A stretch of 64,000 nt of DNA from Dicyema japonicum (taxonomy: Eukaryota; Animalia; Dicyemida): the NCBI GenBank assembly GCA_011109175.1, contig RDEW01000013.1, forward strand, positions 597,221 through 661,220, read 5' to 3'. The notes under the pieces were generated by a model. The model was not told the origin of the DNA, made no database searches, and was given only the letters and a program-made list of their open reading frames with translations. Both the position numbers and the translations under genes were made by a program. Positions 2,895-57,762 of this stretch are shown in pieces (position 1 is the first letter of the stretch; every line of letters starts with the position of its first letter).

Positions 2895-5130
2895 CTATTC
2901 AGTCCCTTGTTCAACAAGCATCCTCTTCTCATATGACTTTGTCTTCCTTATGTAACCCATATTCCGGTTGATAAGCTCCACAATTGATGGATTAACTACC
3001 AAACTACTGTCAATCGGTATTGTTGCATAACTAGGAGACGAGTGCCCAAACAATGCCGTATGACTGTCATCCTCCTTCAATTCCTTTGTGAAAATCAGCC
3101 AACGTATCTTCTTTCCAACACATTCCTAATCTCCCACAGGAAATACTCGTTTGGCGGGAAAAAACGCCGATACATCTACTTCGGACTCCAACAGAGTATT
3201 CTTACCCTTCCAGTTATGTGGCTCACTAGGCAAGACAGTCGGCTCAGTAATACTGAGTAAGTTTACAGAAGAAATGGTGGGCATGTTTGTTGATCATGTA
3301 CTTTGAGTTCTAACAAGGTCTTCACATCTTCCCGATCACGTGGGTCACCAGACTAAACAGAAAACTCAGTAGCATCGGGAGACAATACAGAAAAAATGGT
3401 GTGCATTTCAGTTCGATTACTGACCCGTTTTTGTCGCCTTTTAAACTGTTTGGCAATGGTGGAAGGAAATTGGCTGACGGAAGCAAGTTTGGTAGGTTCC
3501 TTGGTAGGTTCCGAGTCAGAAAGATCTGAGAACAACTCTGTGTAGGTTCTCTCTCCAGTGTCTACTTCCAGACCATCATAAGGAGTCACATAACGAGCAC
3601 TCACTGTCTCATAGTGGTTGTGACTGACTGGATTGGTGACCCTGTACATAAACAGGTTCCAGTCAGTCTCCACAAGCCCCGCCTTCTTACTTTCCCTTTT
3701 TCTCCACCAAGTAAGCCAGGTTGCGGACATATAATAATGGAGACCCTCACCGAGTCCAACTGCTGTCTAAACTTTATTGAACGCTTAATCACTCTGAACT
3801 GCCTTCTGTAGTACTCCCTCATCGGGTCACGTTCCTGTTTGAGTAAAGGACAAAAAAAGTTCGCCTAAAATTAATCCAACCCAAACAGTTCGTTTCAGCT
3901 TTCAATAGTCACAAATATCTCCCACCACCTTCAATGGAACAAATAATTTTTTCAGCTATGTCCTCCACGTGCACAAATTTGTGGAACTCCATCATAGACT
4001 GTCTGTTATCGACCTCCTCACGAGTTCTATTGGCGAAAGAGCTGCTGGAAACCATCTTACCATCCAGTTACATCCCCCTATTTCCAGTGAGGGATCTAAA
4101 ATCCCCCGTATGGACTTTACAGTACGCCTACAATAAGAAAAGAGCATACTCTTAGGCTCACATCACTCCTCTCCACCATAGTCAACATCTCTAGGCTGTG
4201 GCTGAAAGCACAGGACACATGGAAGGCAGTCTAACAAATCTCCACAGCACATTGTAGACAAACCCCCGACCGTTGTCGACAGAGGGAGCATCTGAAGCCA
4301 TACCGCTTGGATGGGATATCCGCCACCCCAACCACAGGTTCCATGAGCACGTGGTCAGCGACTGAGACTTCGGGGGTCCATAGAACACAGCTCAGGTGAA
4401 ACCAATTCTCCTTCCCGTCGGAGTTGTAGGCCCCTGTTTTGCCGCCACATAAAAAGCACGTGGGTTTGGTGACATTGGCGGCACAAGGAGCGCAAAAAAA
4501 GCGGTCCTCGGGGATGACTTGGAGTCCGTAGCATGCCTGGTGGATGGCCACGTTACAGCCATCACAGAAAACGATCTCATTTCCCTCCAAATTGGACGAC
4601 TGGAATGATAAAAACACTACATCAAGACACACAGCACAGACGACCTCCTCAGGAAGATCTTCATTGACTCGTTCTGTTAGATTTTTGTGCTGCATCAGGT
4701 CCCTACACTGCTCCTCCAAGGCTTCCATCACATCTTCAAATAAATTCGGCTCAATTTTCTCACTTTCTGCTTAAATTTAAATATATACTTTTGCTGCGAT
4801 TGTACTCGATGAGGAAAAGTTGGTCAAGACTGTCAATTTCATAGGTAGGGATGAAAAAATACTCCAATAGTTGTACGTTTGTCGGAGCTTGAAGTGTGGA
4901 TGGAGGTAGGTTAAGGGGTTTATGAACGAAATTTGAGGGTGTCGGGTTAAGATCGTTTGGAACCTGAACTCCTTTGTCGTACTTTGACTTCTATTTGTCC
5001 CCCAGATATACGTAATCGTTCTTATCAAAAGGCTGAGTGTCCATCTGTCGCATAGCACTAATATAGTCTTTGCGATGTAGTTCCACTTGGGCATTCTTGG
5101 AGAGCTTTTCCTTCTATACTGGCATCCCAC
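2895..5130 (-). CDS. JADE/BRPF-family PHD finger protein (EPL1-like region, PHD, zf-HC5HC2H), multi-exon with frameshifts; ends approximate
   Basis: CAVCLD..GNEIVFCDGCNVAIHQACYG..FCAPC..CFLC..WFHLSCVLWTPEV..MEPV..CSLC..GVCLQC (4231-4731); YEIDSLDQLFLIEYN upstream; no bromodomain seen; in-frame 21-nt intron 4600-4620. Confidence 0.85.
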
Positions 5131-12547: not shown

Positions 12548-15500
12548 ATGTCTTCAGCCAACAATAGAATTTCTTGTGCTCTCACAAAATTGAAAATTCA
12601 CGAATTGGTATTTTCTCATTTACCATTTGAGAATGAACCTCAAGACAAAGTGAACATCTTGAGTAACCAACGAAAGTGCCAGGTTTGTTTTGATAGCTTA
12701 GTACAAAACAGCCAACATTCAGAGTACCAATCGATATTCTAATCGACGAAATATCTGTCATTTTGCACAACAAAGTATAAACCGTTACAACTTTAGAATT
12801 GCAAGTTCCACGCTTTGTTGGACAAATTAAAGGCGATGGACCTTCTCGTGAGAAACGACACAAATTTGTAATTTTTGGTTGTAACTCAGATTTATTTATG
12901 ACTTTATTTCTGCCAAGGTGAACGGGATTTACTTTCTCTCGAAGATTGTCGGATTTTTACTCATCGAATTGTATTTCGATATTTTACGTAAAGTGGCAAA
13001 TTCAAGGATAGCAGGCAAAACTCAAAATCTCTTAAAAAGGGAGAAAGTATCGTCGACTGCACGTGTCTTCTTGTCGACATATTTAGTGAGATGGTCGATA
13101 ATTCCGTAATTTGTTGGTTTCACTTCAGGTTGGGCTTTCTCAAATCAGAAAAATTGAGAATCTCCTACAAATTTTTCTGATGCTTTTATTCGCCGGAAAT
13201 ACCAGGTTTGCCAAAAAATGAAAATTTAGAATAACAACTTCTGTTTTGAGATTTCTGACAAGACTCTGCCTCCAGAATGAAGTGAACCTAGTAACCTGTG
13301 GAATCATTAACTTATATGAGGTCCCAAATATTTTATTCCAGGAAAACTGTGAGAAGTATAACTTCACAAAAATTTACGAAACAGCGGATAAGCAGAATGT
13401 GAGTTTATCAGTAATTTTCACTTTAATTTGAGATTTCGTTAGTAAAATTCGTCGAAATACTGGTGGACCGACAGGAGGTTCACTCCACTCGAGTGAAGCT
13501 GAAGCATCACTTAAACTACAGTCGTTATAAGCATACCTTGAATGTGAGTCTGAACCGTAATTTTAGAAACTGAAAAAGACTTTGAACAAAAATTTAAAAA
13601 TGAAAATATCAGAAATCATCAATAAGAGTGAAAAATTCAAAATCAAAAATATCCCAATCGACCATCTACAGAATGAACTCCTAAGCCTTGAGAGGGAGTA
13701 CTCTAATGTTTGATTACTTCTAATTTAAGTCTTTGTGTATTATTGATGAGATTAAAGGCTCCACGAAACTTTGCAATTCTGCGAAGGACCATATTTTTCT
13801 TAACTTTGTAGTTTTTGTAAATTACATAGGCGAAATCGAAACCCAAAAAAATGAGTGAATTGAGTATCTCAGAGTGCCAATCTAAAGAATCTCATGAAGA
13901 CGAGTCACAGAGCGAAGAGGATAACTGTCTGAACATAAATCCAGACATTTTTACCACAGATGACGAAATTTCAAACTTTATAAGAGTTCCATTAAAAAAG
14001 GAACCTTCTAATGCCGTTGTTGAAGGTTCCCAATATTGCAAAATCTGAAACTATCAAAGAAATCATTACAACCTCAAGAAATCAGTACTTCTGAAGATAT
14101 CGACACCACCTTCATAAAATCCAATGCCTCCAAAGAGATCACTTCCAATGGATTGAATCAAACAACAATACGATTGAAGACATAGGCGACAAGATACAAG
14201 AGAATATCAGCGATGTCTCAGTCAAGAATGATAAAACATCCCCACAAGAAAAAAATATGAATGTTAAAGAATGTCTGATTCTGCCAACTCTTAAAATTTT
14301 CCTTCCCCCACCGCCTTTGCTAGGGAAAAGCATCAAAAAGGTGGAAAGCAAGAACAAAATCCTGACCCCTTCCACGGCAATGAAAATAGATTCAGACGTC
14401 TTAACCTCAGATGACGAAATTTCAAACTTTATAACATCCCCGTTAACAAAGGAACCTTCAAATGCAGTTGTTGAAGGTTCCCCCAATATTTCAAAATCTG
14501 AAACTATCAAAAAAATCAATACAACCCCAGGAAATTATACGTCTGAAGATATCGAGACCACCCTCATAAATTCCAATTCCTCCAAAGAGATCACTTCCAA
14601 TGGATTGAATCAAACAAACAATACGATTGAAGAGATAGGCAACGAGATACAAGAGAATATCTGTGATGTCTCAGTCAAGAATGATAAAACATCCCCACAA
14701 GAAAAAAATATGAAAGTTAAAGAATGTCTAATTCTGCCAACTCTTAAAATTTTCCTTCGCCCACCGCCTTTGCTAGGAGAAAGCATCAAAAAGGTGGAAA
14801 GCAATAACAAAATTCCGACCCCGTCCAAGTCAATGAGATTATTCCACTGGACTTCAATTATTTCCGACGAAATCAAAGACACCATCTTCTACAACAACAA
14901 CGAGGATATGCTCTATAAAGTTTAAATTCGATTTTACCTAGAAAATTGATCTAAAGTCGTTCACGGACAGTTTTTACTCCCAAGTCAACAGCATTGAAAA
15001 AGAATCAAAGAGAGATTTCAGCTCAAAGAAAATGTCTCTTCTTTCTGCAGACAGACTTCGTAGCATCGGTTTTGTCTTAAGTAATTTAAAGCGATCGCCA
15101 AACGAACTGTAGGCAACCACCTATTCGGAGACCTTGAAGCAATCAACAAATGTGATTGGAACTACTGCCGAATTGGTGATCTCGAAGTTCTCAGACAAAT
15201 CATTCCGACAGAAGATGAGGTCATATTATAACCTGATCCCTAGAAAGCTCTCTACAAGGACTATATAGGAAAACCAGCGCTCATAGAGACACTTTCTGAT
15301 AAAGACAAATTTTTCATTCGAGTAATTTTCCATTGGTTTACTTAGCTTGTCGAAATTGATGACTTTGAAGCTAAACTGAAGTGTTTGTTCTTTATGGCGT
15401 ACTTTGATGATTCCTACGGGTCTCTACTAAAGGTACCATAGTAAAATCATCTCAAGGAAACTGAAATGATGAAAAACGTTCTAAATAGTATAATCAGGTC

Positions 15501-17115: not shown

Positions 17116-17380
17116 GAGTCGGGTGGCATAGTGGTTAGGTGTCGGGCTAAAGTGGCTTAGTCACGAGTTAGATTCTCACTGCTGTGCACCTGGTGGAAGG
17201 TTCCACGCATCTACGATGCGAAAAGGGCTTGAAGAGTGACGCCGTCATCAGTGGAGATTCACTGCGGAACTGGATAGTCAAAAGGACATACACACAAGAA
17301 AAAGAAAAAAACAAAGAAGAGAAGATCATTCCTTGGTTCTCCCTCTACGATTAGTTATAATAACTTTCTTTACTTATTAT
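17116..17380 (+). mobile_element. tRNA-derived SINE, family B (full-length candidate)
   Basis: A-box TGGCATAGTGG (17124-17134), degenerate B-box GAGTTAGATTCTC (17165-17177); body matches 50571-50709. Confidence 0.7.
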
Positions 17381-50570: not shown

Positions 50571-50709
50571 GAGTGAGCCGTCATCAGTGGACTCTCACTG
50601 CGGAACTGGATTGTATAGAAAGGACACTCACACAAGAAAAAGAAAAAGAAGTGAAGATCATTCCTTGTTCTACGATTAGTTAAAATTAACTGTTCTTTAC
50701 TTAAATAAA
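50571..50709 (+). mobile_element. SINE family B, 5'-truncated copy
   Basis: Aligns with 17234-17375 (CCGTCATCAGTGG..TCACTGCGGAACTGGAT..AAGATCATTCCTTG..TACGATTAGTTA). Confidence 0.75.
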
Positions 50710-50890
50710 GTGTGTGTCCTGCCTATGCGGAGCTAATACCACGGCTCCGTGAAAAAGGCTGTTATTATTATACAATTCTTGTGTCCATGGGATAGGGGAG
50801 TTTGCGACTTTTTTTCCAACACTTTCAAGTGAGCAGGACTCCAAATAGATTAATCCAGGACTCCAAAAACTAACCGCATGAAAAGGACTA

Positions 50891-51094
50891 TACCATTTCA
50901 GGTTTAAAGTGGGTCTTACCAAAAGCAAAGTGGTTCTTACCAAAAGCAAAGTGGTACTTACCAAAAGCAAAGTGGTACTTACCAAAAGCAAAGTGGTACT
51001 TACCAAAAGCAAAGTGGAACTTACCAAAAGCAAAGTGGAACTTACCAAAAGCAAAGTGGAACTTACCAAAAGCAAAGTGGAACAAAAATTATTT
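50891..51094 (+). repeat. Left TIR (204 bp) with 8 tandem 21-bp units AAAGTGG-NN-CTTACCAAAAGC
   Basis: Units counted directly; inner end CAAAAATTATTT shared with the right TIR. Confidence 0.95.
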
Positions 51095-52178
51095 AATAAA
51101 CCATGTCATCATTATTTAACACCGATGGGGCCAACCTCTGAATTCTAGCAATTACGGTGTTGCATAAAGATGGAGTGATTATACATAATGAATTAATCAT
51201 ACTTTCTTCTAACTTTTGAAGTCGAAACTCCGTAGTTGACAAAGCTTCTTGTCTCACACCATTCAAAATATTTTTCATATCTGTAGCAATGTGTCTTTTT
51301 ACATCAGCTTTGAAAACTGACCAAATATTCTCAATTGGGTTGAGCATAGGGCTATAGGGACCCAATCTTAAAATTTTATTTCCGATGAATTCATTATCTC
51401 TGACAATTTCTTCAATTCCTGAATGGCATGGAGCATTGTCTACTACTAGCACTACTGGAAAATTGTAAACTTCCCTGGCTTTTCGTAGACAAATTCTCAC
51501 CCATTCATGGGCGGATTCTTTATTAAAGGATCCACGTTTGAATTCATAATGCAACAATCCAAGGGACCCGATGCAACCAATGAAATGTACATTGGCACCT
51601 CGCGAACTTGTTGCAACGACATTAGCCCTTGTTCCTTTTTTTGATCGACCCTTTTTACGGGATATGTGCATGTTTATATTTGTTTCATCCATAAATAATA
51701 TTGGAATTTCCTCCGATTGATATTCCAATAATGAAGTTATAAATTTTTTTCTTTTTTCTTTATTTAATTCACTATTGCCTTTCTCTGGTTCATACCTGAT
51801 ATCTTTCAAAGAATAACAGGCACCGTCCAAGTGGACTCGAATGGTTTCTTTTGAAACATTTAAGCTGAAATTAGAATTTAAAAGAATTCTCAAGGTCTCA
51901 AGAGTAATCCTAGGGTTAATTTCGAGCTGTTCAACACAATAATCTTTATGTTTATCAAGAAATTTTTTTGCTTTTGATCCCCCTCGCTGATCAGGTTTGT
52001 TTTTGTTTTTCAACCAACGATAAGTAGTAGTTTTCGGAACATCGAGAGATTTTGCAAGTTCCCTCCAGTCACCATCTCCCTCATAAGCCCCGATAATAAG
52101 ATTTTTCTTAATTTCAGCTTCAGACTTTTTTATTTGAGCAGGCATATGAATAAAAAAATGAAATATTTGCGCAGACAT
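51093..52178 (-). CDS. DDE_3 (IS630/Tc1-type) transposase, DD35E, uninterrupted 361-aa ORF
   Basis: HTH (WRELAKSLDVPKTTTYRW); catalytic FMDE, VVDNAPCH and LGPYSPMLNPIE with 35 residues between the second D and E; a second possible start Met lies 11 codons in. Confidence 0.95.
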   Translation of the reverse strand: MSAQIFHFFIHMPAQIKKSEAEIKKNLIIGAYEGDGDWRELAKSLDVPKTTTYRWLKNKNKPDQRGGSKAKKFLDKHKDYCVEQLEINPRITLETLRILLNSNFSLNVSKETIRVHLDGACYSLKDIRYEPEKGNSELNKEKRKKFITSLLEYQSEEIPILFMDETNINMHISRKKGRSKKGTRANVVATSSRGANVHFIGCIGSLGLLHYEFKRGSFNKESAHEWVRICLRKAREVYNFPVVLVVDNAPCHSGIEEIVRDNEFIGNKILRLGPYSPMLNPIENIWSVFKADVKRHIATDMKNILNGVRQEALSTTEFRLQKLEESMINSLCIITPSLCNTVIARIQRLAPSVLNNDDMVY

Positions 52179-52203
52179 GCAAATATATAGGTTTTTGCTT
52201 AGT

Positions 52204-52490
52204 CACTTTTGCAATTGATCTCGACACTTTTGCATGTTGCTTTGTCACTTTTGCCAATGATCTCGACACTTTTGCATGTTGCTTTGTCACTTTTGCAATG
52301 ATCTCGTCACTTTTGCATGTTGCTTTGTCACTTTTGCAAATGATCTCGTCACTTTTGCAATTGATCTCGACACTTTTGCATGTTGCTTTGTCACTTTTGC
52401 AATTGATCTCGACACTTTTGCATGTTGCTTTGTCACTTTTGCGAATGATCTCGACACTTTTGCAATTGATCTCGACACTTTTGCAATTGA
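52204..52490 (+). repeat. Internal higher-order minisatellite of two 21-bp units (CACTTTTGCAATTGATCTCGA / CACTTTTGCATGTTGCTTTGT), ~13.5 units
   Basis: Read directly; lies between the right TIR and the transposase start. Confidence 0.95.
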
Positions 52491-52515
52491 AATTAATCTT
52501 CATCCTATAACAAAA

Positions 52516-52780
52516 AAATAATTTTTGTTCCACTTTGATTTTGGTAAGTTCCACTTTGCTTTTGGTAAGTTCCACTTTGCTTTTGGTAAGTACCACTTTG
52601 CTTTTGGTAAGTACCACTTTGCTTTTGGTAAGTACCACTTTGCTTTTGGTAAGTCCCACTTTGCTTTTGGTAAGACCCACTTTGCTTTTGGTAAGACCCA
52701 CTTTGCTTTTGGTAAGACCCACTTTGCTTTTGGTAAGACCCACTGCTTTTGGTAAGACCCACTTTAAACCTGAAATGGTA
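52516..52780 (-). repeat. Right TIR (265 bp) with 11 tandem 21-bp units
   Basis: Reverse complement of the left array; one unit has a 2-bp deletion near 52741-52745. Confidence 0.95.
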
Positions 52781-53319
52781 TAGTATGGACACCGGGATCA
52801 CTTAATTAGACGATAACTTTATCCTCTTCTCGTGATTTCGGGAGTTAATAAAATAACTAATTTTCACTTGATGAATTTTATGATTGGGGGTTTGTTAAAT
52901 AAACTAATTTTGTAGGAATTGTGCTGTATTTTAGTTTATCCAGTTCAAATTTTAACATCCATGTGAATCCCGACTATACCATAATATTTAGTGGAGTAAT
53001 TAACTTGATGATTACATCTGAGAGAACTGTAAATGAATGTGATAATGGTATGGTCGAGTTATCAATTTTAACGAATCAACTGTTCGATATACGAGTATAG
53101 GAAATTCATTCTTCCTCCAACTTATGATTGAATATTCTACCATTAGATTTAAAATTCGATTGGATAATTTGCTAGGATTAATTAGAGTGACTGTTCTTTA
53201 TAAAATAAAGCGTGAGTTCTGGCTAATGGAGACAATAATTCTTGACGGCAGTGTTTTTGTTGTTATATCTTCTTTTTCTCAGTTTCCTCGCCTCATCAAT
53301 TACTCAGAACTCAATTCTT

Positions 53320-55651: not shown

Positions 55652-57762
55652 ATGAAAGATTATTCAGAATTTGATGGAAACCAAATGGGAAGAGTAATGT
55701 CTTCATCAGAAAGGGACATAGACATGGAGAACTTCATGTCAGAGCACCACAGAGAGTACATCACTTATTCCAGTATGAACATAATGTGCATCACCTTCAA
55801 CGTAAATACTCGTTCCCCGAGAGGAGAGATAATAAACATGTTTATCCCCCCAAAAGATTTCAGCAAACCAGACTTGTACGCTCTCTCCCTTCAGGAGATG
55901 GACTTGGGTACAGAAGCCCTTCTCCGTGGATCGGGGATTACTAACCGCGAGCAGGAGTGGCTGAACGTAATTGCCTTGTACCTAGATCCTGGTTATTTGC
56001 GTATCTCCCGTCAGAGACTCCTTGGATTGCCCTTTTTGTACGTGGCAAAGGACTGCCGGGCCCACGTGCGGCTGAAAGACGAAAGGAACCTCGCAACGGG
56101 GCTGATGGGGATCGTGGGAAACAAGGGTGGAGTCTCGGCCACGATCAGCTACATGGACACGACCATAACATTTGTGGGGTCACACTTTCCCGCTCACGAG
56201 GAGAACGTGAGTGAGCGGAACCAGAACTTTCGTGACATTGGACGGGTCTGTGTGGGGTACAATGACGTAATCTTCTGGCTGGGGGACCTAAACTACAGAC
56301 TAACCAACGTGGGAAACGAGTATGTAAGACAGACGATCAGTTCCAACGACTTTGAATCACTGACACAGTTTGACCAACTGAACATTGAGAAGGAGTCGAA
56401 GCGGGTATTTGTGGAGTATTTTGAGCCACCGATAATTTTCCCTCCTACCTACAAGTTCGATCCTGGAAGTGACGACTATGACACATCTCCCAAATTCAGG
56501 GTCCCTGCCTGGACCGACCGGATTCTCTACTACTACTCTAACAACAATCCAGTGGAGTACTTGTACTATAACTCGGTACCCGATGTCCGATTCAGCGACC
56601 ACAGGCCAGTCCGGGCCATTTCTCCGTAACTGTGTGGGCTCAGTGAATCCCGAAAAGGAGAAAGTGATCCGTGGAAAGTTCAACATGGAGAGGACCCGAA
56701 TCGAGTCAAGGATGCAGCCGAAGGCCGAGCTCTCACAGAATGAAGTCAACTTTGGCAATGTATACTTCATGGAGATCGCGGAAAGGATCGTGGAGCTCAG
56801 AAACGTTGGAACTACCCCTCTCAGTTATGAGATTGTCAACATCTTTAACGGAGAGACCTCTTCAGCCCTCCATAGCAGCTGGCTCAGTGTGGAGCCTCGG
56901 TGTCACACCATTGAAGCAGGAAAAACAGAGCGAATCTACCTCTCCGTCCACATCACTATGAGGGACCTGGAGAAGTTCAACCACATGGAGCAGATGAGCG
57001 ATACCCTGATTGTCCAAGTGGACAGAGGATCTCATCATTTTCTGTGTGTGGACGCTTGCCTGAGACCCACCTCGTTTGGAAGGTCCCTGAATCTCCTGTG
57101 CAACACTACCAGCCATTCTCTCAGTTGGATGCGGCTGATTTGGTAGATGGTCAGAGTCAGGAACACGAATTGCCGGTACCCAAGGAGCTTTTTTACCTGA
57201 TCGACCGTTTGGTTGAACTGTATTCTAAGGGAGAGGTGGATATTACCTTGTTCAGTGAATCGGAATTGCTAAGTTCGGAACTCTCCCATATTGTCCGGTG
57301 TATCGACGGCTATTGTGAGTGCTGTTCCCCCCAGAATCTAGTTGGTAGTGTTTTCTGTAATTTAAGCCTCCTCCAACTCTCTCTTTTACTCACTGCTGCT
57401 ATTCATTGGGTCCCTGACTAGACCTCTGATCAAGAGTTCGAATATCACTCTATTCATGGACCCATCATCCTCCTCCCCTGTCAAAGACGTTTGTTTGTGA
57501 GTGATTGTAGGTCCTCGACTACCTCCCGTTCCTGGATCGATGTAATGTGCTGTATTTGATGGCGTTTTTACGATACATTTCGCAGAATGTGGAGTATGAT
57601 GATAAACTGGAGTTTGCGTCGAAGATTGAAACCTCGTTGTTTCAGACTGGTGAATGTCAGAACTCGGATGACGAAAATAAGAGGATCCTGTTTATACTGA
57701 GATTCCTGAACATGGATGATCGTTTGTTGAGTGAGTTGTGTGAGCCGGTTCAAGAGTTTTGA
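55652..57762 (+). CDS. OCRL: OCRL/INPP5B-type inositol polyphosphate 5-phosphatase (IPPc, ASH, RhoGAP-like), with apparent 1-bp frameshifts
   Basis: TFNVN, GNKGGV, VGSHFPAH, IFWLGDLNYR, PTYKFD, VPAWTDRIL, SDHRPV; ASH ELSQNEVNFGNV..WLSVEP; RhoGAP-like LPVPKELFYLIDRL. Confidence 0.92.

What the first reader, a model, noticed from the sequence alone, without database searches (positions are those of the whole stretch)
50891..52780. Intact foldback-like IS630/Tc1 (DD35E) transposon whose TIRs are arrays of 21-bp modules
Seen: this is the only uninterrupted transposase in a window full of decayed elements. Its TIRs are 204 and 265 bp, each a ~15-bp terminus plus 8 or 11 tandem 21-bp units. The transposase stop codon overlaps the inner edge of the left TIR. 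The reconstructed empty site is ACTAGT. Established: bacterial IS630 prefers CTAG and duplicates TA; most Tc1/mariner TIRs are short or carry only 2-3 direct repeats; long modular TIRs typify Foldback-type elements and Tc3. Inference: this is a recently active family combining IS630-like catalysis and targeting with foldback architecture. The 21-bp period (two helical turns) could place many transposase-binding sites on one DNA face.
Basis: partly seen in the sequence, partly recalled or inferred. Interest (0 to 1): 0.8.

Follow-up and report, generated by a model that had tools for sequence, protein, structure and literature searches.

The report
IS630-like transposon with modular ends
This is an intact IS630/Tc1-mariner-type jumping gene whose ends are 8 and 11 tandem copies of a 21-base module, and because its relatives in beetles, octopus, a microsporidian and many environmental eukaryotes share the same module design and the same CTAG landing site, it is a conserved design, not described in any paper I could find, rather than a local oddity.

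Summary
Window 50891-52780 is a 1,890-bp element with perfect 23-nt inverted termini and a TA duplication. Its TIRs are 204 and 265 bp, made of 8 and 11 units of 21 bp. It carries an intact DDE_3 transposase with D164/D247/E283 (DD35E).

The protein passes NCBI's curated IS630-family cutoff. Its model has two helix-turn-helix bundles plus an RNase H fold, and the best PDB match is full-length Mos1.

The arrays are not local slippage. Relatives at 32-62% protein identity carry arrays of period 20-21 bp (41-42 as a double unit) at their ends. These relatives are Harmonia, Zophobas, Octopus sinensis, the microsporidian Cucumispora and about 12 metagenome contigs. Unit sequences differ but share a core motif. 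An oomycete relative has only two units.

CTAG targeting holds across the clade: C before the TA at 10 of 11 ends and G after it at 15 of 15. Copies of the surrounding host repeat that lack the insertion show that this C and G are host DNA.

A third array of 14 units lies just upstream of the gene and keeps only half of the TIR module.

That the units bind transposase is inferred, not shown. My text searches found no paper describing this architecture in IS630/Tc1-mariner elements. I rate it a new variant of a known kind, of moderate to high interest.

The parts
50577..50888 (.). Left part of the very high-copy host repeat into which the element inserted
   Evidence: Word depth in run X1 reaches 1.9-2.4 million here, against 500-1,300 in the unique flank. 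Contigs join 50868 to 52783 with about 21 replacement letters, which are paralogous copies without the insertion.
50889..50890 (.). Left copy of the TA target-site duplication (target ACTAGT, core CTAG)
   Evidence: Read directly from the sequence. The paralog consensus reads GGACTG|GTATGG.
50891..51094 (.). 3' TIR relative to the gene, 204 bp: a unique 15-nt tip followed by 8 units of 21 bp plus a partial unit
   Evidence: Unit variants run from outside to inside as GGGTC x1, GGTTC x1, GGTAC x3, GGAAC x3.
51093..52145 (-). Transposase gene, 350 aa from M12. An in-frame ATG at 52176-52178 would give 361 aa.
   Evidence: DDE_3; IS630 family. Homologues, including the octopus protein, align from M12. 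Residues 1-12 have pLDDT below 50. A TATA-like box lies 5 nt upstream of the M1 ATG.
51822..52127 (-). Predicted bipartite DNA-binding domain: two three-helix bundles (residues 18-58 and 75-119) joined by a basic RGG-containing linker
   Evidence: AlphaFold2 model, mean pLDDT 85.8. Full-length Mos1 transposase is the top PDB match at E 7e-12.
51330..51689 (-). Catalytic core holding D164 (51687-51689), D247 (51438-51440) and E283 (51330-51332): DD35E
   Evidence: These columns are invariant in alignment A1. The Sleeping Beauty catalytic domain aligns over residues 166-304.
52183..52189 (-). TATA-like box (TATATAT) between the internal array and the start codon
   Evidence: Its role as a promoter is inferred.
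52201..52494 (-). Internal array of 14 units of 21 bp with the invariant core GCAAAAGTG[A/T]C, in the same orientation as the 5' TIR units, ending 22 bp before the first ATG
   Evidence: The core matches the GCAAAGTGG half of the TIR unit. The other half of the TIR unit (CTTACCAAAA) is absent.
52516..52780 (.). 5' TIR relative to the gene, 265 bp: a unique tip followed by 11 units of 21 bp plus a partial unit (the second unit lacks 2 bp)
   Evidence: Unit variants run from outside to inside as GGGTC x5, GGGAC x1, GGTAC x3, GGAAC x2.
52781..52782 (.). Right copy of the TA target-site duplication
52783..52865 (.). Right part of the interrupted host repeat
   Evidence: High depth, and joints from 50868.

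Best explanation
This is a young, autonomous cut-and-paste DNA transposon. It belongs to a eukaryotic clade of IS630-type (IS630/Tc1-mariner) elements.

Shown:
- It made a TA duplication inside a CTAG site.
- Each end is a unique tip of about 15 nt followed by a head-to-tail array of 21-bp units.
- This design is conserved across the clade.

Inferred:
- Each 21-bp unit is one bipartite binding site for the paired-like DNA-binding domain. The GCAAAGTGG half is the part conserved across the clade.
- Because 21 bp is about two turns of the helix, the sites would lie on one face of the DNA. The arrays would then load many transposase molecules side by side, raising occupancy and specificity and helping the two ends to pair.
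- The conserved unique tip (YACCWTTTY) next to the TA would fix where the DNA is cut.
- Unit number would drift by slippage or by gap repair after excision.
- The 14 half-site units upstream of the gene would act like the Sleeping Beauty 'half-DR': extra one-subdomain sites that enhance transposition or feed back on the element's own promoter.
For: Anatomy:
-.

Protein:
- Pfam DDE_3 at 4.5e-21.
- NCBIfam IS630 family at 113.5 bits, above the cutoff of 100.
- Invariant D164/D247/E283.
- The AlphaFold2 model has two three-helix bundles plus an RNase H fold. Foldseek puts full-length Mos1 first at 7e-12 and the Sleeping Beauty catalytic domain at 6e-9.

Arrays as a clade trait:
- Arrays of period 20-21 bp (41-42 as a double unit) flank the gene in Harmonia (6.5 and 9.6 units), Cucumispora (about 7 and 7.6), Zophobas (8.4 and 9.4), Octopus sinensis (4.9 and 3.0, plus a neighbouring array of 15), L005 (7.7 and 7.8), L009 (6.5 and 6.3), L029 (21.4) and others.
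- Lag 20, 21, 41 or 42 is the best autocorrelation lag at 25 of 26 ends.
- Arrays occur in every subclade of the tree. The three bacterial IS630 loci examined have none.

Units look constrained:
- Unit consensuses share a motif (AAATTGGGAAT or AATTTCAGAAT). The similarity score is 211 against 189.6 +/- 2.6 for shuffled units, with 0 of 200 shuffles reaching it.
- The motif type follows the protein tree.
- Within arrays, the shared half is better kept than the rest (0.89 against 0.82, p 0.007).

CTAG target:
-.

Family multicopy and recently active:
- Depth over the gene is 39,000-82,000 against 500-1,300 in the unique flank.
- Many variant contigs and six internal-deletion joints are present.

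Precedents for multi-site TIRs:
- Sleeping Beauty IR/DR and half-DR (PMC7827188).
- Galileo THAP-domain sites in tandem repeats of long TIRs (PMC3688188).
Against: - No binding, footprint or transposition data exist, so the role of the units is inference.
- In the window copy the variable unit positions (8-9 in the shared register) fall inside what I call the core, so the half-site boundaries are uncertain.
- The core-versus-rest test uses arrays that are not all independent, and a register chosen by cross-species similarity.
- The oomycete relative manages with two units, so long arrays are not essential for the clade.
- Whether run X1 is DNA or RNA is unknown, so the depth ratio is not a copy number.
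- Unit counts rest on a single assembly.
Confidence: 0.72

Rival explanations
1. The arrays are neutral by-products. Slippage and template switching during gap repair keep duplicating a subterminal binding site. Only the outermost site and the tip matter, and the rest is ballast.
For: The two TIRs hold the same variant blocks in different numbers (5/1/3/2 against 1/1/3/3), which shows ongoing gain and loss of units. Unit number ranges from 2 to 21 among relatives. Tandem repeats expand readily.
Against: The period stays at 20-21 bp in every lineage while the unit sequence has diverged almost completely. Both ends always carry arrays. A core motif is shared across the clade and tracks the protein tree. 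Neutral arrays would be expected to decay or to vary in period.
Confidence: 0.15
2. The arrays mainly restrain the element. They could titrate transposase away from the cleavage site, a built-in form of overproduction inhibition. The internal array could occlude the promoter. Alternatively, read-through transcripts of the long inverted arrays could fold into hairpins that yield small RNAs, whose typical 21-nt length would match the unit length.
For: The 14-unit internal array sits directly upstream of a TATA-like box and the start codon. The long inverted repeats can pair. The period equals a common small-RNA length, which may be coincidence.
Against: No small-RNA or expression data could be obtained. 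The internal array is specific to this lineage, whereas the TIR arrays are universal in the clade. Self-silencing hairpins would not obviously be kept by selection acting on the element.
Confidence: 0.08
3. The element belongs to an ITm family that already has a name, such as Hiker DD35E, Gambol, or a Repbase entry. Its modular TIRs are then already on record, and nothing here is new beyond one more host.
For: Hiker (DD35E) exists but its paper was not in the searchable library (reference 51). Repbase could not be consulted. The family is large, with 997 representative clusters at E<=1e-30, so curators have probably met it.
Against: Nine full-text searches found no ITm element described with tandem 21-bp TIR arrays or with a CTAG target in eukaryotes. 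Traveler is excluded: its TIRs are 13-68 bp with CAGTC tips. Dici, which its authors place close to Gambol and Hiker, has 432-478 aa transposases and a CAGTCGGT tip. This clade has about 350 aa and YACC tips.
Confidence: 0.15
4. The arrays are an assembly artefact or a chance repeat.
For: Short-read contigs break inside the arrays, so the exact unit numbers are not independently confirmed.
Against: Contigs from four runs of two samples, plus a second organism, cover TIR units, the internal array and the gene. Independent genomes of other species show the same design. Chance expectation for the unit core is 0.02 matches against 18 seen.
Confidence: 0.02

Closest known systems
Bacterial IS630 family (IS630 of Shigella sonnei, ISY100)
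   Same: One transposase gene of about 340 aa with two N-terminal HTH motifs. DD35E spacing, which is the classical value for IS630 (PMC11544213). TA duplication with preference for 5'-CTAG-3' (Tenzen and Ohtsubo 1991, cited in PMC2170065). The protein passes the NCBIfam IS630 cutoff.
   Different: Only 22-28% identical to bacterial IS630-family proteins on plasmids. It forms a separate eukaryotic clade on a long branch. IS630 has 20-bp TIRs (PMC11544213), and the three bacterial loci checked have no arrays. Here the TIRs are 204-265 bp with 8-11 units.
IR/DR Tc1-like elements (Sleeping Beauty; from my own knowledge also Tc3, Minos, Paris, Bari3)
   Same: Long TIRs of about 220 bp carrying more than one transposase-binding direct repeat. 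Sleeping Beauty has a left-end-only 'half-DR' bound by one subdomain that enhances transposition (PMC7827188). This parallels the one-sided internal half-site array here.
   Different: IR/DR elements have two separated sites per end, not 8-11 contiguous phased units. They use DD34E. Sequence similarity to Sleeping Beauty is marginal (E 4.5e-4). Their TA targeting has no CTAG requirement.
Galileo (P superfamily) and Foldback-like elements; Tm1 (Mutator/Foldback)
   Same: Long, internally repetitive TIRs. For Galileo, the transposase DNA-binding domain binds several sites within the tandem repeats (PMC3688188). This shows that foldback-style ends can arise in different transposase superfamilies (PMC3169594).
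   Different: These are different transposase superfamilies (THAP/P and MULE). Their TIRs are much longer and less regular. Here the TIRs are only 25% of the element, with a strict 21-bp period.
Traveler (DD35E Tc1/mariner family)
   Same: DD35E spacing, transposase of about 340 aa, TA duplication (PMC7093834).
   Different: Traveler has short TIRs of 13-68 bp with CAGTC or CAGCC tips, is closest to DD34E/Tc1, and is essentially confined to vertebrates. This element has YACC tips and modular TIRs of more than 200 bp, and it scores as IS630 family.
Tc4/Tc5 of C. elegans (from my own knowledge, not checked here)
   Same: ITm-related elements with fold-back or very long TIRs and a palindromic target (CTNAG).
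   Different: They make a TNA duplication, belong to a pogo-like transposase lineage, and their TIRs are not reported as phased 21-bp arrays.

Membership tests
IS630/Tc1-mariner (ITm) superfamily | DDE/D transposase with an RNase H-like catalytic fold of the DDE_3 type | tested here: met
   Pfam DDE_3 at 4.5e-21. Invariant D164, D247 and E283. Foldseek matches to Mos1, Sleeping Beauty and SETMAR catalytic domains.
IS630/Tc1-mariner (ITm) superfamily | N-terminal bipartite (paired-like) HTH DNA-binding domain | tested here: met
   The AlphaFold2 model has two three-helix bundles, residues 18-58 and 75-119, with a basic linker. Full-length Mos1 is the best PDB match.
IS630/Tc1-mariner (ITm) superfamily | TA target-site duplication flanking terminal inverted repeats | tested here: met
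   TA lies on both sides. Host-repeat paralogs without the insertion fix the boundaries. Relatives show the same arrangement.
IS630 family (as defined for bacterial insertion sequences) | Protein reaches the curated score of the NCBIfam equivalog NF033545 | tested here: met
   113.5 bits against a cutoff of 100, over model positions 9-292 of 299. Four relatives score 107-119 bits.
IS630 family (as defined for bacterial insertion sequences) | DD35E spacing and insertion at TA within CTAG | tested here: met
   The spacing is 35. The flanking base is C at 10 of 11 ends and G at 15 of 15.
IS630 family (as defined for bacterial insertion sequences) | Short (about 20-30 bp) simple TIRs; prokaryotic host | tested here: not met
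   The TIRs are 204 and 265 bp and modular. The window carries animal-type genes, an OCRL-like 5-phosphatase and a PHD-finger protein. Bacterial relatives are only 22-28% identical.
Traveler (DD35E/TR) | Short TIRs (13-68 bp) ending in CAGTC or CAGCC; closest to DD34E/Tc1 | tested here: not met
   The tips are TACCATTTC and the TIRs exceed 200 bp. Similarity to Sleeping Beauty is only E 4.5e-4. Family features are taken from PMC7093834.
Hiker (DD35E) and Gambol (DD34E) | Placement inside those clades in a transposase phylogeny | not testable with these tools
   No reference sequences could be obtained by reference, and the Hiker paper is not in the library. The only indirect signs are from Dici, which its authors place close to these families: it has longer transposases (432-478 aa) and a CAGTCGGT tip.
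Foldback elements (Drosophila FB type) | Long TIRs built of tandem repeats | tested here: met
Foldback elements (Drosophila FB type) | TIRs make up most of the element, with little or no unique centre; not an ITm transposase | tested here: not met
   TIRs are 25% of the 1,890 bp. The centre encodes an IS630-type transposase.

The most novel reading that the evidence does not exclude
A widespread eukaryotic offshoot of IS630 keeps the bacterial CTAG target rule. It has also evolved a distinct way of recognising and pairing its ends: transposase assembles cooperatively, filament-like, on phased 21-bp binding-site arrays, one protein per two helical turns, with a separate conserved tip for cleavage. 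This would be a new synapsis architecture within the IS630/Tc1-mariner group. It would also be a naturally site-restricted (CTAG) eukaryotic transposon that could be developed as a tool.
Probability: 0.3. Interest if true: 0.75.

Novelty: new variant of a known kind. Interest (0 to 1): 0.6.

Why it matters
Known Tc1/mariner and IS630 elements have one, two or at most a few transposase-binding sites per end, and the eukaryotic ones land at almost any TA.

This clade reaches from dicyemids, cephalopods and beetles to microsporidia, with a reduced two-unit form in oomycetes. Its members keep 3 to 21 phased 21-bp modules per end and an almost absolute CTAG target.

This matters in three ways:
- It gives a natural series, from 2 to 21 units, for testing how the number and phasing of binding sites control end recognition and synapsis in the best-studied transposase superfamily.
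- It ties a eukaryotic lineage to bacterial IS630 by a functional trait (target choice) as well as by sequence.
- The window copy looks intact, so it is a ready candidate for a new transposon with restricted sites.

It also warns annotators that short-read assemblies break at these arrays. Most database copies are therefore contigs that hold only the ORF.

Tried and rejected
- One search scanned genome contigs for the 23-nt tip. That collection is bacterial and archaeal only, so the blank result says nothing.
- An exact-sequence look-up of the window protein found no record.
- Three homologue contigs could not be fetched because the sample files were too large.
- The contig of the closest relative, P0001 (62% identity), ends at the inner TIR edges, so its arrays could not be read.
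- The IMG/VR scan found no viral copy.
- Only one partial copy of the host repeat lies in the window, at 17230-17376. The paralogous empty sites therefore came from reads, not from the window.
- No allele of this exact locus without the insertion was seen. All joints across the element carry paralog-type differences.
- Membership in Traveler is rejected.
- A recent transfer from bacteria is rejected, given 22-28% identity and a long branch.
- A recent exchange with the named octopus copy is rejected, given only 44% identity.
- The kind of run X1 (DNA or RNA), and the identity of 'organism B' that holds pieces at 90% identity or more, could not be resolved.
- Host identity (Dicyema japonicum) is taken from earlier notes. 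I did not re-test it.
Full report
**1. What is there**

Window 50891-52780 is a 1,890-bp element.

- **Tips.** The two 23-nt tips (TACCATTTCAGGTTTAAAGTGGG) are perfect inverted copies and occur nowhere else in the window.
- **Arrays at the ends.** Inside each tip lies a head-to-tail array of 21-bp units: 8.3 copies at 98% match on the window-left side and 11.3 copies at 96% on the right. The 19-nt unit core occurs 18 times, all within the element, against 0.02 expected.
- **TIRs.** The arms pair at 98% over 189 nt. The TIRs are 204 bp and 265 bp, together 25% of the element.
- **Gene.** Between the TIRs, on the minus strand, is one uninterrupted ORF, 51093-52178, whose stop codon overlaps the inner TIR edge.
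- **Third array.** A further array at 52201-52494 was not part of the finding's text. It has 14 units of 21 bp with an invariant core GCAAAAGTG[A/T]C. It points the same way as the adjacent TIR units and ends 22 bp before the first ATG.

Read from outside to inside, the two TIRs hold the same variant blocks in different numbers:

| TIR | GGGTC | intermediate unit | GGTAC | GGAAC |
|---|---|---|---|---|
| 5' (window right) | x5 | GGGAC x1 | x3 | x2 |
| 3' (window left) | x1 | GGTTC x1 | x3 | x3 |

The arrays are therefore colinear and have changed by gain or loss of units.

**2. Boundaries and target**

The flanks read GGAC-TA[element]TA-GTATGG.

The element sits inside a very abundant host repeat. 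Read-derived contigs of other copies of that repeat run straight across the site and read ..AAAAGGACTG|GTATGGACACC.. (tables 5, 5c and 7). This has three consequences:

- The C before the TA and the G after it are host DNA, not part of the TIR.
- The duplication is TA.
- This particular repeat copy carried ACTAGT where the family consensus has ACTGGT.

**3. The protein**

- It hits Pfam DDE_3 at 4.5e-21.
- It passes the curated cutoff of NCBI's IS630-family model with 113.5 bits against 100, over positions 9-292 of 299.
- In a 23-sequence alignment, D164, D247 and E283 are invariant. The D-to-E spacing is 35 in the window protein and in all relatives at or above 44% identity. More distant relatives range over about 32-36.
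- An AlphaFold2 model (mean pLDDT 85.8) shows two three-helix bundles, residues 18-58 and 75-119, joined by a basic RGG linker, followed by an RNase H-like domain.
- The best PDB matches are full-length Mos1 transposase (7e-12) and the Sleeping Beauty catalytic domain (6e-9). By sequence alone, Sleeping Beauty is the only PDB hit, at 4.5e-4.
- Bacterial IS630-family transposases on plasmids are 22-28% identical.

The true start is probably M12 (window 52145, 350 aa), for three reasons:

- Homologues, including the octopus protein, align from there.
- Residues 1-12 are modelled as disordered.
- A TATA-like box lies only 5 nt upstream of the M1 ATG.

**4. Relatives have the same ends**

This is the main result. 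For homologues whose contigs could be fetched, TRF finds arrays of period 20-21 bp (41-42 as a double unit) on both sides of the gene.

| Relative | Protein identity | Units (5' / 3') |
|---|---|---|
| Harmonia axyridis | 49% | 6.5 / 9.6 |
| Cucumispora dikerogammari (microsporidian) | 48% | about 7 / 7.6 |
| Zophobas morio | 38% | 8.4 / 9.4 |
| Octopus sinensis | 44% | 4.9 / 3.0, plus a neighbouring 15-unit array |

- Of 32 metagenome loci, those with enough flank show the same design. L005 has 7.7 and 7.8 units, L009 has 6.5 and 6.3, and L029 has 21.4. L006, L012, L015-L020 and L028 also show it. Most of the remaining contigs are too short to reach the ends; a few with flank (L007, L021) show only weak, degenerate units.
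- Lag 20, 21, 41 or 42 gives the best self-match at 25 of 26 ends.
- The oomycete Aphanomyces invadans copy has a 56-bp TIR with two motifs 21 bp apart.
- Three bacterial IS630 loci have no arrays.
- In a tree rooted on those bacterial sequences, the eukaryotic proteins form one clade and arrays occur in each of its branches.
- The tip is conserved too, as TA|YACCWTTTY.

**5. The units look constrained**

- Unit sequences differ between hosts, but after rotation they share a core (AAATTGGGAAT or AATTTCAGAAT; in this element AAAGTGG..). The similarity score is 211, against 189.6 +/- 2.6 for shuffled units, and 0 of 200 shuffles reach it.
- The TTTCAGA type is found in the basal branches and the TTGGGA/GTGG type in the crown clade, so the motif follows the protein tree.
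- Within arrays, the shared half is better conserved than the rest (0.89 against 0.82, Wilcoxon p 0.007). The caveat is that arrays of one element are not independent.
- The internal array of the window element keeps exactly this half (GCAAAAGTG) and lacks the other half (CTTACCAAAA).

**6. CTAG**

At independent insertion sites of the window element and its relatives, the base before the TA is C at 10 of 11 5' ends. The base after the TA is G at 15 of 15 3' ends. Background frequencies are 0.18 and 0.20, giving binomial p of 4e-7 and 4e-11. Together with the paralog evidence in section 2, this is a real target preference. It is the one reported for bacterial IS630 (Tenzen and Ohtsubo 1991, as cited in PMC2170065).

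**7. Activity and abundance**

- In run X1, word depth over the gene is 39,000-82,000, against 500-1,300 in the unique flank at 52866-3200.
- Many contigs carry different single-base variants.
- Six joints skip internal parts of the element, for example 50912>51612, 51264>51882 and 52231>52549. These are the pattern of deletion derivatives.
- A second sample of the same organism (X5) and a different organism (X6) also hold pieces of the gene, the TIR units and the internal array at 90% identity or more (table 8).
- Whether X1 is DNA or RNA is not on record, so the ratio is not a copy number.

**8. How it most likely works**

Shown:
- An IS630-type DDE transposase with a bipartite HTH domain.
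- A TA duplication in CTAG.
- A conserved tip plus phased 21-bp arrays.

Inferred:
- Each unit is one full site for the bipartite domain.
- The 21-bp period (two helical turns) lines the sites up on one face of the DNA, so that several transposase molecules bind side by side and help the ends to find each other.
- The unique tip positions cleavage.
- The internal array offers half-sites, comparable to the Sleeping Beauty half-DR. [quoted passage not shown]
- Alternatively, the internal array lets transposase sit on its own promoter.

For Galileo, a P-superfamily element with foldback-like ends, the THAP domain was shown to bind repeated sites inside the TIR repeats (PMC3688188). This is a precedent for the idea in another superfamily.

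**9. Comparison and novelty**

- The element is an ITm transposon and scores as IS630 family, but it is not a bacterial IS.
- It is not Traveler. That family also has DD35E, but its TIRs are 13-68 bp with CAGTC tips.
- Its relation to Hiker (DD35E) and Gambol could not be tested.
- Nine full-text searches found no ITm element described with tandem 21-bp TIR arrays or with CTAG targeting in eukaryotes. Repbase could not be searched.
- The family is large: 997 representative clusters at E<=1e-30.

I rate it a new variant of a known kind. The scan has a separate note on the internal array of this same element. It also has notes elsewhere in this genome on foldback elements with 21-bp-repeat TIRs, which may be non-autonomous relatives; I did not check them.

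Noticed in passing
L004:1501-2583 (Zophobas morio, P0063); P0098 (Octopus bimaculoides); P0051, P0061, P0062, P0065, P0066: A subclade of these IS630-like transposases carries an N-terminal RING finger (Pfam zf-RING_2) fused to the transposase. The octopus gene models are annotated as 'E3 ubiquitin ligase ZNRF4'. The Zophobas copy still has 21-bp modular TIRs and a CTAG site, so it looks like a transposon rather than a domesticated gene.
   Followed up: partly
window 50577-50888 and 52783-52865: The element interrupts an extremely abundant short repeat, with word depth up to 2.4 million in run X1 and several length variants at a poly-A stretch near 50642. It is probably a SINE-like family. Only one other partial copy lies in the window, at 17230-17376.
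   Followed up: partly
run X6 (organism B); also X9 (organism C): A different organism's run holds contigs at 90% identity or more to the gene (51370-51536), a TIR array (52670-52742) and the internal array (52300-52353). This is either a sister species or a partner in horizontal transfer. Dicyemids live in cephalopods, and octopus genomes carry this family, although the named octopus copy is only 44% identical.
   Followed up: partly
L019:2378-2485 and L028:784-894: Another lineage of the clade has an internal array of 19-bp units (5.7-5.9 copies) between the transposase stop and the 3' TIR. Extra internal arrays have therefore arisen more than once.
   Followed up: no
L037:984-1301: In Octopus sinensis a 15-unit array in the opposite orientation ends about 20 bp upstream of the 5' tip of the gene-bearing copy. 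The two together form a hairpin-like pair. It may be the 3' end of a second copy or a foldback-type derivative.
   Followed up: partly
window 55652-57146 (+) and 4231-4731 (-): Host genes lie near the element: an inositol polyphosphate 5-phosphatase of the OCRL type (Exo_endo_phos2 at 1.5e-65 plus an ASH domain) and a PHD-finger protein fragment. The region 56-58 kb has 47% GC against about 35% elsewhere.
   Followed up: no
window 13930-14836: A 453-bp unit is repeated twice at 89% match and overlaps an ORF of 222 aa that has no Pfam hit.
   Followed up: no
(protein atlas): The nearest feature-space clusters include DDE_3 transposases recorded from giant viruses (Nucleocytoviricota) and from Cnidaria, some of them carrying a PAX-type paired domain. 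My IMG/VR scan found no viral copy of this clade.
   Followed up: no
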